The notes: generated from the sequence alone by a model not told the origin. A DNA stretch of 63,661 nucleotides, filler included, from Octopus bimaculoides (GCF_001194135.2; 8 parts of 8 records of this genome joined end to end with filler, not necessarily neighbours in it), one strand, 5' to 3'; positions 6,261-31,197 are shown, numbered from the whole stretch's first letter. Numbers and translations: made by a program.

Positions 6261-7328
6261 ATAGCCACATCTGGAATGACTTTGAATCATAAGTCTATTT
6301 GATCAGAGTTTATGTAGAGCTAAATACCACAATACAAGCCGTTGAGCGAGCAAACTGAAATTGTAGCCAAATCTCCCTCAAAATCCATTTTAGAATCTTA
6401 TGTTAAAGAGTGTTGTAGGTTCCCTACATCCATAAGAAGAAAGACAGGGTGGTCACAGATGGAGAACTTATGATTATAGATTTGATTGTCAAGACATGTG
6501 GCCTGATGGCTAGAGTTGCACTAAAAATCTTATGATCATGATTCCAATATCCCAACTAGGCCATGCATTGTGTTATGTTCTTCAGCAACACACTTCATTT
6601 CATAACGCTCCAGTCCACTCAGCTGTAAACAAGTCCCAGCAATAACTGGTGAGTTAACCTAGTGAAGGACTTCCATCCCATTGAGGAAAAGAGGGACATT
6701 GTAGTAATTTCACTCACTCATATACCACAAAGATCAGGTTAAGTCAGGCTTTATGAGTCTTAAAACTCATGATAGAGCTATAGGTTTGATAGATCAATAT
6801 TGACTGATGTTGTTGGTAGTGGTAGTGGTGAAGGTGGTGGTGGATAAACACTACCAACAACAACAACAACGACATTAAGGACATGAATAATTCGATCCAA
6901 TTCACTTTAAGACATGTCTCCCAAAGATTCTCTGTCATTTATTATCCTCTTATATATTATAGATGTGTGTTCTTTCTCTTCACACTTTAATTTTCTTCAC
7001 AGTATATGACGTCATTATGTTACCTTCATGATTTGCATAGCGTGCAGGTGTGTGTATATTTATATATATATATGTGTGTGTGTGTTTATATATATATAGA
7101 TAGATACATATATCCCTCCTCCTCCCAGGAAAATAATTTCACCACCACCATTGTCTCCCATGGCAATCTACTGTTGACTGACTCCTCTTAGTTGAGTTGG
7201 TGTACTTGCAACACTCTCATCTCTTGTCAGCACTTCTAATCTACTTAGCTTGGATTAGGAACTAAAAGTTTTCTAGTGACCTTCCCCACTCCTCATATGC
7301 AGTGTATATAACGCGTGTGTGTGTATAC

Positions 7329-8478
7329 CTCTCAGCCCTCCAACACTTCCTTGACCGCCGCCCTGACCCCACACCTAGCACCTCTACCCTGCTTCGTCTG
7401 GCAGAACTCATCCTCACCCTTCTCTGGGGTCGCGATGGGAACGAGAATGGGTCCCAATTATGCCAACCTCTTTGTTGGTTACATTGAGGCCCAAGTATTC
7501 TCCCAATTCTCCGGTCCGACCCCAGAACTATACGGTCGCTACATAGATGACTGTATAGGAGCCACCTTCCTCTCCCGCGAACAGCTCTGCCTTTTCATCT
7601 CCTTCCTCTCTAACTTCCNNNNNNNNNNNNNNNNNNNNNNNNNNNNNNNNNNNNNNNNNNNNNNNNNNNNNNNNNNNNNNNNNNNNNNNNNNNNNNNNNN
7701 NNNNNNNNNNNNNNNNNNNNNNNNNNNNNNNNNNNNNNNNNNNNNNNNNNNNNNNNNNNNNNNNNNNNNNNNNNNNNNNNNNNNNNNNNNNNNNNNNNNN
7801 NNNNNNNNNNNNNNNNNNNNNNNNNNNNNNNNNNNNNNNNNNNNNNNNNNNNNNNNNNNNNNNNNNNNNNNNNNNNNNNNNNNNNNNNNNNNNNNNNNNN
7901 NNNNNNNNNNNNNNNNNNNNNNNNNNNNNNNNNNNNNNNNNNNNNNNNNNNNNNNNNNNNNNNNNNNNNNNNNNNNNNNNNNNNNNNNNNNNNNNNNNNN
8001 NNNNNNNNNNNNNNNNNNNNNNNNNNNNNNNNNNNNNNNNNNNNNNNNNNNNNNNNNNNNNNNNNNNNNNNNNNNNNNNNNNNNNNNNNNNNNNNNNNNN
8101 NNNNNNNNNNNNNNNNNNNNNNNNNNNNNNNNNNNNNNNNNNNNNNNNNNNNNNNNNNNNNNNNNNNNNNNNNNNNNNNNNNNNNNNNNNNNNNNNNNNN
8201 NNNNNNNNNNNNNNNNNNNNNNNNNNNNNNNNNNNNNNNNNNNNNNNNNNNNNNNNNNNNNNNNNNNNNNNNNNNNNAGGGACGTTCGGCTAGGTTCGGA
8301 GTCCCCCGTCGGCCGTCACTTCCAACTGGCCAACCACTCTCCCTCTAACATCTCCGTTTTCGGCCTCGTCCTGCACCATGGGTCCACTCCCTCGCGACTC
8401 CACTTGGAGCAACGCTACATTTTCAACCTTAATTCTTCTTTCTCCTTCGGACTCATCGCAGCCCTCTCTTCCTTATGA
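7329..8478 (+). mobile_element. Penelope-like retroelement, 5'-truncated (RT + GIY-YIG end, gap in middle)
   Basis: LSALQHFLDRR...LLRLAELILTL, then (frameshift) SGVAMGTRMGPNYANLFVGY...LYGRYIDDCIG, typical PLE RT motifs. After the gap, SPVGRHF...LEQRYIFNL matches the GIY-YIG C-terminus. Confidence 0.85.
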
Positions 8479-27803: not shown

Positions 27804-28800
27804 CTTTAATATCTTGGGAACTGTACTCCTTTACCCTTTACTTGTTTCAGTCATTTGACTGTGACCATGCTGGAGCACCGCCTTTAGTCAAACAAACTGA
27901 CCCCGGGAATTATTCTTTGTAAGTCTAGTACTTGTTCTGTCAGTCTTTTTTGCCGAACGGCTAGGTGATGGGGACATAAACACACCAGCATCAGTTGTCA
28001 AGCATTGCTAGGGGGACAAACACAGACACACAAACATACATACACACATATATATACATTCATATATACGATGGGCTTCTTTCAGTTTCCGTCTACCAAA
28101 TCCACTCACAAGATACCACGAAGTGGGACTGAACCTGGAACCATTTGGCTGATAAGCAAGCTACTTACCACACAGCCACTCCTGCACCTAGATAAAAATT
28201 TTGCACAGTATACACCAAGAGTCGATGACATGGCATCTTTTATTTTCAATTTAGATTTAGTAGGTGCAGACATGGCAGTGTGGTAAGAAGTTTGCTTGCC
28301 AACCACACTGTTCTGAGTTGAATCCCACCTTGAGAAAGTGTCTTCTACTATAGCCTCAAGTTAACCAAAGCCTTATGAGTGGATTTGGTAGAAACTGAAA
28401 GCCTGTTGTGTGTGTGTGTGTGTGTGTGTGTCTCCTTGCCTTAATATCATGTGATAGCTGTAAACAAATGTCACCTGCATGCAAGCGGTGTCCTTCATTC
28501 CCCATCTTCTGCAAAAATATTACCTTGCTTGGAAACAGGTGAGGGTTAGCAGCAGGAACAGCATCCAGATGTAGAAAACCCACCCTAAACAAAATTCCAT
28601 CTGACCCATGCAAACATGGGAAAGTGGATGTAAAAATTATAATGAAATGATGATGATTTACCTTGTAAGATCTTACCAACATGGTTCTACTTACTGTTTT
28701 CCTCATCTTATTTTATCTTCTCTTTTTTTTTGTTTTATCTTCTCTTTTTTTTTGTTTTATCTTCTCTTTTTGTTCTTATTTTCTTATTCCTATTCTCCAG

Positions 28801-29034
28801 ATACTCTTTGACAGATTCTGGGCAATCATTGGCCTCAAAACTTTCTCAGTCAGCACAAGACACCGAAAGCATTGTGCCTTTTCTATCTGGTGATGAACCT
28901 AGCAGTACCACATCAATTCCACCTGCAACATGTGAAACGTTCACAGTTCTTAACTCTGTTTCAAATGCCAGAAAATTCTCACCAATCAAAGAAAATTCTT
29001 CCAATCTGGATAAATTTCTTGGACAAAACTCTAA
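28801..29034 (+). CDS. MUS81: MUS81 coding exon 8 (WH end + Ser/Thr-rich linker)
   Basis: (R)YSLTDSGQSLASKL closes the WH domain (Y.LT..G..LA.KL). ctccag| and AA|gtaaat, phase 2 to 2. Confidence 0.9.
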
Positions 29035-29845
29035 GTAAATATCAACATTTGGTAATATTTCTTTTGAGCAAGTTGGCAAGCTGGTAGAATTGTTAACACG
29101 CTGGGAAAAGTGCTTGGCAGTAGGAAGGACATCTGGCTGTAGAAATCATGCCAAAACAGACATTGGAGCTCAGTAGAGTCTTCTAGCCTGTTGGTTCTTG
29201 TCACACCATCCAACCCATAACCAATGCCTGTATTGAAAAAGGGACGATGTGGTGTTGGCTGAGTGGAAAAATAAAATCAAGATGTTAATTACTTTTTATG
29301 AAAAATTAGGTCTTCGTTCATCATCATCATCGTTTAACGTCTGCTTTCCATGCTAGCATGGGTTGGACAATTTGACTGGGGACTGGCTAACCAGATGGCT
29401 ACACCAGACTCCAATCTGATCTGGCAGAGTTTCTACAGCTGGATGCCCTTTCTAACGCCAACCACTCCGAGAGTGTAGTGGGTGCTTTTTACGTGCCACT
29501 GGCACGGAAGCGAGACCGCTGCTCTGACAGTGATCCTGCTTGGTTGGTGCTGTTAGTTCTCTTTGTAAAACTCTATCAATGAGAAAAATTAACACTCCAT
29601 CAATAATTGTTATTTTTTATGCAAGAAAAAAAAAGCACTCCATTCTCTTTGTGATGTTCATCTTGTTTATATACATATATATATATTTTTTGTAGTATAT
29701 TGCCACTTAAGTGTGGCTGACCCCTAGGGGTGGATGTTACTGTTGCTTTTAGCCCCAGGAGGACATCTCCTCCAGCTGGCTTATCGACACACTACTGTGT
29801 CCTGTTTGCCAAGGGAAGTTATCCCTCCCATCATGATCTGTAGCA

Positions 29846-29890
29846 CGAACGGACCCGGGTTTCAGGGTTATTTCCCTTCGTCAGCGTCCG
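29846..29890 (-). ncRNA. Type I hammerhead ribozyme, canonical core
   Basis: CGGACG-CUGACGA-AGGG-AAAUAA-CCCU-GAAA-CCCGGG-UC-CGUUCG: 6-bp stem I, 4-bp stem II, palindromic stem III (ACCCGGGU) and a GUC cleavage triplet. Confidence 0.88.
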
Positions 29891-30612
29891 ATAGCCACTG
29901 ATCTTTGATGAGAGAGATAAAACCTTGGCAATCTTATATCTACTTTTCCAGTGAAATTCTTCACTGATATCGAAAAGGTGAAAACAAGCAATGTTAATTC
30001 TCTAAATAAAGTATTAACAGTAACTGCACGATAAAGTGTAGTATATTGCCACTTAAGTGTGGCTGACCCCNNNNNNNNNNNNNNNNNNNNNNNNNNNNNN
30101 NNNNNNNNNNNNNNNNNNNNNNNNNNNNNNNNNNNNNNNNNNNNNNNNNNNNNNNNNNNNNNNNNNNNNNNNNNNNNNNNNNNNNNNNNNNNNNNNNNNN
30201 NNNNNNNNNNNNNNNNNNNNNNNNNNNNNNNNNNNNNNNNNNNNNNNNNNNNNNNNNNNNNNNNNNNNNNNNNNNNNNNNNNNNNNNNNNNNNNNNNNNN
30301 NNNNNNNNNNNNNNNNNNNNNNNNNNNNNNNNNNNNNNNNNNNNNNNNNNNNNNNNNNNNNNNNNNNNNNNNNNNNNNNNNNNNNNNNNNNNNNNNNNNN
30401 NNNNNNNNNNNNNNNNNNNNNNNNNNNNNNNNNNNNNNNNNNNNNNNNNNNNNNNNNNNNNNNNNNNNNNNNNNNNNNNNNNNNNNNNNNNNNNNNNNNN
30501 NNNNNNNNNNNNNNNNNNNNNNNNNNNNNNNNNNNNNNNNNNNNNNNNNNNCGGATTTCAGAAGATATAAGATTGCCAGGTTTTTGTCTCTCTCACCAAG
30601 GTCAGCGGCTAT

Positions 30613-30657
30613 CGGACGCCGACGAAGGGAAATAACCCTGAAATCCGGATCCATTCA
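30613..30657 (+). ncRNA. Variant (probably impaired) hammerhead copy
   Basis: CGGACG-CCGACGA-AGGG-AAAUAA-CCCU-GAAA-UCCGGA-UC-CAUUCA: U4C core change, two stem I mismatches, stem III still paired. Confidence 0.7.
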
Positions 30658-30894
30658 TGCTGCAGATGTTGGTGAGAGGGATAACTACCCTTGGCAAACA
30701 GGACACAGTCGTGTGTCGATAAGCCAGCTGGAGGAGATGTCCTCCTGGGGCTAAAAGCAACAGTAACATCCACCCCTAGGGGTCAGCCACAATTAAGTGG
30801 CAATATACTACAGTTTATCGTGCAGTTACTGTTAATACTTCATTTAGAGAATTAACATTGCTTATATATTTTTTCTTTTTGGTTAATGAATCAG

Positions 30895-31098: not shown

Positions 31099-31145
31099 GT
31101 AAGTGCTTATTTTATATTTTTATTTGCTGTTGCTGCTGCAGCAGC

Positions 31146-31151
31146 AGTAGC

Positions 31152-31196
<45 letters not shown>
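31146..31196. repeat. (AGT)n microsatellite
   Basis: Direct reading. Confidence 0.95.

Positions 31197-31197
<1 letters not shown>

What the first reader, a model, noticed from the sequence alone, without database searches (positions are those of the whole stretch)
29680..30874. Candidate cephalopod retrozyme: 346-nt ribozyme-bearing monomer in a divergent inverted array with a TSD, inside MUS81 intron 8
Seen: (1) a non-coding 346-nt period (29692 vs 30038); (2) one hammerhead in each sequenced monomer; (3) the right arm (30563-30863) is the reverse complement and reads through the monomer junction (...gcaatatactac|a(g/c)tttatcgtgcag), so the unit is circularly permuted, as expected from a tandem or circular template; (4) the whole structure is flanked by the direct repeat (T)ATATATTTTTT; (5) the arms are not identical, so this is not a trivial assembly inversion. 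Established: metazoan non-LTR retrozymes are tandem monomers of a few hundred nt with type I hammerheads, yield circular RNAs and are thought to be mobilised by Penelope-like elements, whose insertions often show inverted terminal repeats. Two or three PLE families occur in this window. Inference: this is a non-autonomous, self-cleaving, circRNA-forming element inserted in one event. I cannot check whether it has been described in octopus.
Basis: partly seen in the sequence, partly recalled or inferred. Interest (0 to 1): 0.9.

Follow-up and report, generated by a model that had tools for sequence, protein, structure and literature searches.

The report
Octopus hammerhead-ribozyme retroelement, inverted insertion
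An intron of the Octopus bimaculoides MUS81 gene holds an old insertion of a small non-coding mobile element carrying a self-cleaving hammerhead ribozyme motif, laid down head-to-head as Penelope-like retrotransposons do; it is a likely new cephalopod member of the known "retrozyme" class, but copy number and RNA products could not be checked.

Summary
The sequence observation holds. In a MUS81 intron of Octopus bimaculoides, an insertion of about 1.17 kb (29692-30863) is flanked by an exact 11-nt duplication (29681-29691 and 30864-30874) in a (TA)n tract. It has two inverted arms of a 346-nt non-coding unit around a 481-N gap.

- **Left arm:** on its minus strand it carries a complete type I hammerhead: every core base, helices of 6, 4 and 2 bp, and an 8-nt palindrome. 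A descriptor scan expects 0.01 such motifs per 37 kb.
- **Right arm:** its copy is degenerate (core CCGACGA, two helix I pairs lost).
- **Rfam:** it recognises neither copy, even at E<=10.
- **Arm divergence:** the arms differ at 20 sites. Three differences are compensatory double changes (P about 0.0005-0.004).
- **Fold:** the unit folds into a rod (z = -8).
- **Architecture:** inverted arms with 3' ends outward, a partial tandem, a 52-nt one-sided extension and a microsatellite target all match published Penelope-like insertion features.

Best reading: a fossil insertion of a retrozyme-like, Penelope-mobilised hammerhead element, a new member of a known kind. Not testable here: genomic copy number, array length, RNA or circRNA, self-cleavage, gap content and the empty site.

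The parts
29668..29686 (.). (TA)9.5 microsatellite forming the insertion target; overlaps the left duplication copy
   Evidence: TRF. (TA)n is a published preferred target of some Penelope-like elements (PMC8557442).
29681..29691 (.). Left copy of the target-site duplication ATATATTTTTT (12 nt if the T at 29680 is counted)
   Evidence: chance estimate.
29692..30037 (-). Complete 346-nt unit of the left arm. The ribozyme sense is the minus strand. Its 3' end (…AUAUACUAC) abuts the duplication.
   Evidence: Fold -128.2 kcal/mol, z = -7.96. GC 43.6%.
29846..29890 (-). Intact type I hammerhead motif. Helix I is CGGACG/CGUUCG, the core is CUGACGA…GAAA, helix II is AGGG/CCCU and helix III is A-U, C-G with a CCGG loop. 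The predicted cleavage site follows C17, between 29852 and 29851.
   Evidence: The double-hammerhead dimer is predicted at -40.9 kcal/mol against 2 x -17.7.
29800..29930 (-). Stem of about 40 bp that extends hammerhead helix I (the rod domain)
   Evidence: -61.4 kcal/mol, z = -6.77. Two compensatory pairs between the arms lie here.
30038..30070 (-). 3' end of a second, upstream unit of the left arm (partial tandem), cut off by the gap
   Evidence: 100% identical to 29692-29724.
30071..30551 (.). Assembly gap of 481 N. It must hold the 5' parts of both arms and the head-to-head junction.
   Evidence: The same gap is present in GCA_001194135.2.
30552..30811 (+). Right arm: a 5'-incomplete unit in ribozyme sense on the + strand, the same strand as the MUS81 pre-mRNA
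   Evidence: 91.7% identity to the left arm over 253 nt.
30613..30657 (+). Degenerate hammerhead copy. The core is CCGACGA, helix I is CGGACG/CAUUCA, and the helix III palindrome is kept as AUCCGGAU.
   Evidence: It fails the descriptor scan.
30812..30863 (+). 52-nt read-through into the start of the next unit. This is either a one-sided 'tail' or the junction of a tandem or circular template.
   Evidence: 98% identity to 29986-30037 reverse-complemented. The tail concept is from PMC8557442.
30864..30874 (.). Right copy of the duplication ATATATTTTTT. It now forms part of the pyrimidine tract 20-30 nt upstream of the 3' splice site (AG at 30893-30894).

Best explanation
This is a fossil insertion of a small non-autonomous retroelement with a 346-nt unit. 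Each unit carries a canonical metazoan type I hammerhead ribozyme, so it is a cephalopod counterpart of the non-LTR retrozymes.

Inferred life cycle:
1. Tandem units are transcribed.
2. Neighbouring ribozymes pair through their 8-nt palindrome into a double hammerhead. They cut after GUC (sense position 186) and release 346-nt monomers.
3. A host RNA ligase circularises the monomers into a stable rod.
4. A Penelope-like RT/GIY-YIG enzyme supplied in trans nicks a (TA)n tract and copies a longer-than-unit template from both staggered nicks.
5. The result is two head-to-head arms with 3' ends outward, a partial tandem, a one-sided extension and an 11-nt duplication.

Shown here: the anatomy, the motif, the duplication, the structure-preserving divergence and the absence of coding capacity. 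Inferred: transcription, cleavage, circularisation and the enzyme that mobilised the element. At this locus the element is probably inert, because the arm in the sense of the MUS81 pre-mRNA has a dead ribozyme.
For: - The hammerhead descriptor gives its only hit in 46 kb here, with 0.01 expected by chance and 0 of 300 shuffles at helix I >=6 and helix II >=4.
- Helix sizes of 6, 4 and 2 bp with a palindromic tetraloop equal the 'canonical metazoan type I' architecture in PMC4209133.
- Two copies cofold into the double hammerhead.
- Three compensatory double substitutions separate the arms, one of them in helix III. Expectation is 0.2-0.36, P 0.0005-0.004.
- The unit folds as a rod: z = -8 linear, and 63% paired as a circle.
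- Unit size, GC and lack of any ORF fit PMC7229834.
- The 11-nt duplication has an empirical chance of at most 8e-4.
- The target is a (TA)n tract.
- The inverted copy, the partial tandem, the one-sided tail and the short-read assembly failure are all described for Penelope-like insertions in PMC8557442.
- A Penelope-like RT/GIY-YIG fragment lies in the same window at 7312-8475.
Against: - No Rfam hammerhead model matches, even at E<=10 on an 81-nt slice.
- The base pair at the foot of helix II is A-U rather than the usual G-C.
- The monomeric ribozyme fold is poor: -7.4 kcal/mol against an alternative of -17.7.
- Only 1.1 and 0.9 units are sequenced.
- No second locus was found in 46 kb of this genome, in an Argonauta orthologous locus, in metagenome or viral DNA scans, or by a peptide proxy search. 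A family is therefore inferred, not shown.
- There are no RNA data.
- The arms differ by 8%, which is awkward for a single template.
- The extension is 52 nt, longer than the published 30-40 bp.
Confidence: 0.6

Rival explanations
1. The 346-nt unit is not an independent non-autonomous family. It is the terminal repeat (pseudo-LTR) of an autonomous Penelope-like element, present here as a heavily 5'-truncated insertion, or with its coding body hidden in an underestimated gap.
For: - Hammerheads normally lie in the pseudo-LTRs of these elements, and their insertions are often 5'-truncated, tandem and inverted (PMC8557442, PMC4209133).
- A 2026 preprint derives retrozymes from pseudo-LTRs.
- The gap content is unknown.
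Against: - In the left arm a complete 346-nt unit lies between a unit junction and the element's end with no ORF, so the repeating unit itself is 346 nt.
- The ribozyme is the canonical 6/4/2 type. It is not the minimal variant described for metazoan Penelope-like elements (helix II 7-8 bp, a bulged base, no helix III).
- The unit has no similarity to the Penelope-like fragment in the window.
- A coding body of 2.5 kb or more would need the 481-nt gap estimate to be wrong more than five-fold.
Confidence: 0.2
2. Assembly artefact: short-read contig ends were extended into copies of a dispersed repeat from elsewhere in the genome. The inverted pair, and perhaps the tandem junctions, then do not exist at this locus as drawn.
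For: The structure straddles a gap in an Illumina-based assembly. The chromosome-level version kept the same gap. Such structures are known to upset short-read assemblies.
Against: Each junction between unique flank and element lies well inside a contig that also holds a correctly oriented MUS81 exon. The exact 11-nt duplication at both outer boundaries is hard to produce by misassembly. The arms differ, so they are not one sequence used twice.
Confidence: 0.07
3. The element is a DNA-level structure, either a foldback or MITE-type transposon or a local inverted duplication, and the hammerhead-like motif is fortuitous and has no RNA function.
For: It has long inverted arms and a flanking duplication. 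Rfam does not see a ribozyme. One copy of the motif is broken.
Against: - The termini are not mirror images. The right arm ends 52 nt further along the unit than the left, which fits a tandem unit and not terminal inverted repeats.
- The motif is expected 0.01 times by chance.
- Compensatory changes preserve helix III and the long stem.
Confidence: 0.05

Closest known systems
Mytilus galloprovincialis non-LTR retrozymes (Cervera & de la Peña 2020, PMC7229834)
   Same: Both are mollusc elements. The units are non-coding repeats of about 350-390 bp with one type I hammerhead each, low GC and a highly self-paired predicted RNA. The mussel ribozymes also lack the archetypal loop-loop nucleotides.
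   Different: The mussel elements have about 5000 copies and abundant circRNAs shown by Northern blot. Here only one locus is seen and there are no RNA data. No sequence comparison was possible. An inverted head-to-head arrangement is not described in that paper.
Amphibian satellite 2 / axolotl retrozymes (HHR_Amex1 and HHR_Amex2)
   Same: Units are 330-350 nt. [quoted passage not shown] HHR_Amex2 also has a non-G-C foot of helix II, as this motif does (A-U).
   Different: These are vertebrate elements with 10^4-10^5 copies in long arrays. No sequence homology is claimed.
Penelope-like element insertions (Penelope/Poseidon, Neptune, Naiad; PMC8557442)
   Same: The insertion has an inverted 5'-truncated copy at the 5' side, a partial tandem, a one-sided tail, a variable duplication and a (TA)n target, and it breaks short-read assemblies.
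   Different: There is no RT/GIY-YIG ORF within the element. The unit is 346 nt against 3-4 kb. The ribozyme is the canonical type, not the minimal Penelope-like variant. The tail is 52 nt against 30-40 bp.
Rfam Hammerhead_1 (RF00163) loci annotated in the giant squid genome (235 hits, PMC6962438)
   Same: They show that type I hammerheads exist in cephalopod genomes.
   Different: Those match the Rfam model and this motif does not. They were never analysed as mobile elements.

Membership tests
Metazoan non-LTR retrozyme | A type I hammerhead with the complete conserved core in the repeat unit | tested here: met
   The left unit has C3-A9, G12-A14, A15.1-U16.1 and C17 all present, with helix I open. 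The right unit is degenerate (U4C). Caveat: the pair at 10.1-11.1 is A-U.
Metazoan non-LTR retrozyme | Recognition by a curated hammerhead covariance model (Rfam) | tested here: not met
   No hammerhead family was reported at gathering score or at E<=10, even on an 81-nt slice. Filter loss cannot be excluded.
Metazoan non-LTR retrozyme | Head-to-tail tandem repeats of 150-450 bp units (dimer or more) | tested here: inconclusive
   The 346-nt period rests on 34 nt of a second unit in the left arm and a 52-nt junction read-through in the right arm. The rest is in the gap. TRF finds no array.
Metazoan non-LTR retrozyme | Many dispersed copies in the genome | not testable with these tools
   No octopus genome or read search was available. 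There is no other copy in 46 kb. The proxy searches were empty.
Metazoan non-LTR retrozyme | No coding capacity, LTR, PBS or PPT; GC below about 45-50% | tested here: met
   The longest stop-free stretch is 62 aa. GC is 43.6%.
Metazoan non-LTR retrozyme | Target-site duplication longer than 4 bp when present | tested here: met
   An 11-nt exact duplication.
Metazoan non-LTR retrozyme | Stable, highly self-paired monomer RNA | tested here: met
   -128.2 kcal/mol with z = -7.96 as a linear RNA; -123.9 kcal/mol and 63% paired as a circle.
Metazoan non-LTR retrozyme | Expression as unit-length linear and circular RNAs; self-cleavage | not testable with these tools
Penelope-like insertion architecture | An inverted 5'-truncated copy next to the direct copy, with 3' ends outward | tested here: met
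   The arms have opposite orientation and both run 5'-ward into the gap. The junction itself is unseen.
Penelope-like insertion architecture | A one-sided tail extension of 30-40 bp | tested here: inconclusive
   The right arm extends 52 nt past the point where the left arm ends. The length is outside the published range, and a tandem or circular template explains it equally well.
Penelope-like insertion architecture | A variable-length duplication and a microsatellite, (TA)n, target preference | tested here: met
   An 11-nt duplication within (TA)9.5 T6. Literature.
Autonomous Penelope-like element | An ORF with RT and GIY-YIG endonuclease | tested here: not met
   There is no ORF in the unit. 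The only RT/GIY-YIG fragment is at 7312-8475 and is unrelated in sequence.
Minimal hammerhead of metazoan Penelope-like pseudo-LTRs | Helix II of 7-8 bp, helix I of 4-5 bp, an extra base before stem II, and no helix III | tested here: not met
   Here helix II is 4 bp, helix I is 6 bp or more, there is no extra base, and helix III is 2 bp plus a tetraloop.

The most novel reading that the evidence does not exclude
Octopus bimaculoides harbours a live retrozyme family that produces 346-nt self-cleaved circular RNAs. This locus would preserve the integration signature (double target-primed copying from staggered nicks in a (TA)n tract: inverted arms, partial tandem, tail). That would show structurally, not only by co-occurrence or phylogeny, that Penelope-like enzymes integrate retrozymes. 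In addition, the ribozyme lying in the sense of the host pre-mRNA may have been selectively inactivated while the antisense copy stayed intact.
Probability: 0.3. Interest if true: 0.55.

Novelty: new member of a known kind. Interest (0 to 1): 0.42.

Why it matters
Retrozymes are a recently recognised class of ribozyme-bearing mobile elements that produce abundant small circular RNAs. How they integrate is inferred mainly from co-occurrence with Penelope-like elements and from sequence relatedness to those elements' terminal repeats. A retrozyme-type insertion with clean boundaries that shows the full Penelope-like insertion signature would be direct structural support for that link. It would also extend the class to cephalopods; I found no paper describing retrozymes there. 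For the host, the element sits 31 nt upstream of a MUS81 splice acceptor. Its two arms would form a duplex of about 300 bp in the pre-mRNA, in an animal known for heavy RNA editing. If the unit proves to be single-copy or inactive, this is just one more decayed repeat in an intron.

Tried and rejected
- **Rfam:** searched at gathering score on the whole piece, then at E<=10 on 1.5 kb and on 81 nt. No hammerhead was reported.
- **Sequencing runs and read laying:** I did not try to get round this.
- **Newer assembly:** the MUS81 locus from GCA_001194135.2 is the same sequence with the same gaps.
- **Orthologous empty site:** only O. bimaculoides and a distant Argonauta hians MUS81 are in the protein collection. 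The Argonauta intron has no unit-like sequence but is too diverged to define an empty site.
- **Peptide proxy for other copies:** all seven stop-free translations of the unit were searched against 5.8 billion proteins, with no hit.
- **Exact DNA scans:** two metagenome scans and one viral-contig scan found nothing.
- **Penelope-like RT/EN fragment search:** it returned 268 proteins. The two contigs I fetched are not octopod, because they lack the octopod SINE, and they hold no unit. I dropped this route.
- **Foldback or MITE reading:** rejected because the termini are offset by 52 nt.
- **Selection for killing the sense-strand ribozyme:** I considered this, but the ribozyme's substitution density (5 of 45 nt) equals that of the surrounding region, so it stays speculation.

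Full report
**Origin of the window.** Exon translations match crossover junction endonuclease MUS81 of Octopus bimaculoides at 99% identity. The locus fetched from GCA_001194135.2 (CM046603.1) is identical to the window and has the same N runs. MUS81 lies on the + strand. The finding sits in the intron between the exon at 28745-29035 and the exon starting at about 30895. This is intron 8 or 9, depending on whether the short first exon of isoform X1 is counted.

**The gap.**
- The left contig ends inside the element, and its ribozyme sense is on the minus strand. The right contig starts inside the element, and its ribozyme sense is on the + strand.
- In element coordinates both run 5'-ward into the N run, so the two sides cannot be continuous. 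A head-to-head junction must lie in the gap.
- Frame is irrelevant because the unit has no open frame longer than 62 aa.
- Contig flipping cannot explain the inversion. Each contig also carries a MUS81 exon in the right order and strand.
- If the 481-nt estimate is roughly right, the insert is 1172 nt, about 3.4 units. That leaves no room for a coding Penelope-like body.

**Anatomy.**
- The direct repeat ATATATTTTTT lies at 29681-29691 and 30864-30874. It sits at the end of a (TA)9.5 tract.
- Across the window, an exact 11-mer at two boundaries 0.3-3 kb apart occurs with frequency 3e-5, or 8e-4 when the 11-mer is AT-only.
- The left arm (29692-30070) is one complete 346-nt unit plus 33-34 nt of a second unit, which is 100% identical to the first.
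- The right arm (30552-30863) is the reverse complement: 253 nt at 91.7% identity, then 50 nt at 98%. Those last 50 nt continue across the same unit junction.
- The outer termini are therefore offset by 52 nt. This rules out simple terminal inverted repeats.
- No other copy exists in the 46-kb locus.

**The ribozyme.**
- On the minus strand at 29890..29846 the sequence reads CGGACG CUGACGA AGGG-AAAUAA-CCCU GAAA C-CCGG-G UC|CGUUCG.
- All invariant core positions are present. Helix I is open, which makes it type I. Cleavage is predicted between 29852 and 29851.
- A descriptor scan found this as the only hit in 46 kb on both strands. It required the core, helix I of at least 4 bp, helix II of at least 3 bp, helix III of at least 1 bp and a UH cleavage site.
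- Dinucleotide shuffles gave 0.01 hits per 37 kb, and none of 300 shuffles reached helix I >=6 with helix II >=4.
- Helix sizes of 6, 4 and 2 bp with a palindromic tetraloop are those given for canonical metazoan type I hammerheads in PMC4209133. They are not those of the minimal variant found in Penelope-like terminal repeats.
- As a monomer the catalytic fold is weak (-7.4 kcal/mol against an alternative of -17.7).
- Two copies cofold into the classical double hammerhead with an 8-bp helix III (ACCCGGGU paired with itself), at -40.9 against -35.4 kcal/mol.
- Against membership: Rfam reports no hammerhead at any threshold tried, and the foot of helix II is A-U rather than G-C. Axolotl HHR_Amex2 also departs from G-C at that position.
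- The right-arm copy (30613-30657) has CCGACGA in the core and two helix I pairs lost. It is very probably inactive.

**RNA structure and divergence between the arms.**
- Helix I continues into a stem of about 40 bp (z = -6.8).
- The whole unit folds at -128 kcal/mol (z = -8). As a circle it is 63% paired.
- The arms differ by 20 substitutions. Three pairs changed on both sides and kept pairing: two U-A to C-G changes in the long stem, and C15.2-G16.2 to U-A in helix III, which keeps the 8-nt palindrome.
- Random placement of the same substitutions gives 0.2-0.36 such events (P = 0.0005-0.004). Total broken pairs are only mildly fewer than expected (P about 0.02-0.05).
- Divergence is uneven: 18 of 130 nt in the ribozyme half, against 4 of 175 nt in the 3' part plus extension (Fisher p = 1.7e-4).
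- Together these results argue that the arms descend from two structurally constrained variants of an RNA family, and did not decay from one copy in place. They also point to a conserved 3' region. This is indirect evidence for a family, not a count of copies.

**Comparison with what is known.**
- PMC7229834 defines metazoan non-LTR retrozymes as 150-450-bp tandem units with type I hammerheads. They have low GC, no LTR, PBS or PPT, duplications longer than 4 bp, self-paired RNAs and abundant linear and circular transcripts. The mussel units are 350-390 bp.
- PMC8557442 describes Penelope-like insertions as 5'-truncated partial tandems. They often have an adjacent inverted 5'-truncated copy, a one-sided 30-40-bp tail, variable duplications and (TA)n targets, and they cause trouble in short-read assemblies.
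- A 2026 preprint derives retrozymes from Penelope-like terminal repeats.
- This locus meets every structural criterion that could be tested.
- It leaves four criteria open: array length, copy number, expression and activity.
- Cephalopods are not mentioned in the retrozyme papers. The only trace I found is 235 Rfam Hammerhead_1 hits listed for the giant squid.

**Verdict.**
- The best reading is a fossil insertion of a retrozyme-type, Penelope-mobilised hammerhead element. That makes it a new member of a known kind.
- It has one modest point of extra interest: the complete Penelope-like insertion signature on a retrozyme-type element.
- The junction read-through does not prove a circular template.
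- The claims of a circRNA and of a multi-copy family remain untested.

Noticed in passing
window 7312-8475 (+), gap 7619-8277: A 5'-truncated Penelope-like ORF fragment (RT motif …YIDD… and the C-terminal GIY-YIG part) lies upstream of MUS81 and is interrupted by an assembly gap. It is 93% identical to an O. bimaculoides 'GIY-YIG domain-containing protein' (P0011). It shows no sequence similarity to the 346-nt unit.
   Followed up: partly
window 30864-30894: The insertion ends 31 nt upstream of the 3' splice site (AG at 30893-30894). The right copy of the duplication now supplies part of the pyrimidine tract, and the likely branch region (ttaatga, 30883-30889) lies downstream of the insert.
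   Followed up: no
window 29692-30863: Both arms lie in one intron, so the MUS81 pre-mRNA should fold them into an imperfect duplex of about 300 bp (92% identity). This is a plausible substrate for adenosine deaminases in a heavily editing animal. Only the dead ribozyme copy is in the sense of the pre-mRNA, and the intact one is antisense.
   Followed up: no
window 29318-29514; L001 and L002, many sites: A SINE-like repeat of about 190 nt just upstream of the insertion recurs at least 8 times in the 46-kb O. bimaculoides locus. More than 25 diverged copies occur in the Argonauta hians MUS81 locus.
   Followed up: partly
L001 36493-37649 (just beyond the window's right edge): The public annotation splits MUS81 into two gene models at an assembly gap. 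The N-terminal model has HHH_8 and WHD_MUS81 (420 aa) and the C-terminal model has ERCC4 and EME1-MUS81_C (272 aa). The Argonauta annotation is split in the same way.
   Followed up: no
window 31126-31197: A long trinucleotide microsatellite, (GCT/GCA)n running into (GTA)n, lies in the next intron directly after the exon ending at 31099.
   Followed up: no
L003 (ENA ERZ25067889 ctg50236, 4.5 Mb): The contig that carries a Penelope-like RT hit (P0069) also has densely packed genes with weak Pox_VLTF3 and Pox_A32 family hits. That suggests giant-virus-like sequence next to the RT-like gene. It is unrelated to the octopus locus.
   Followed up: no
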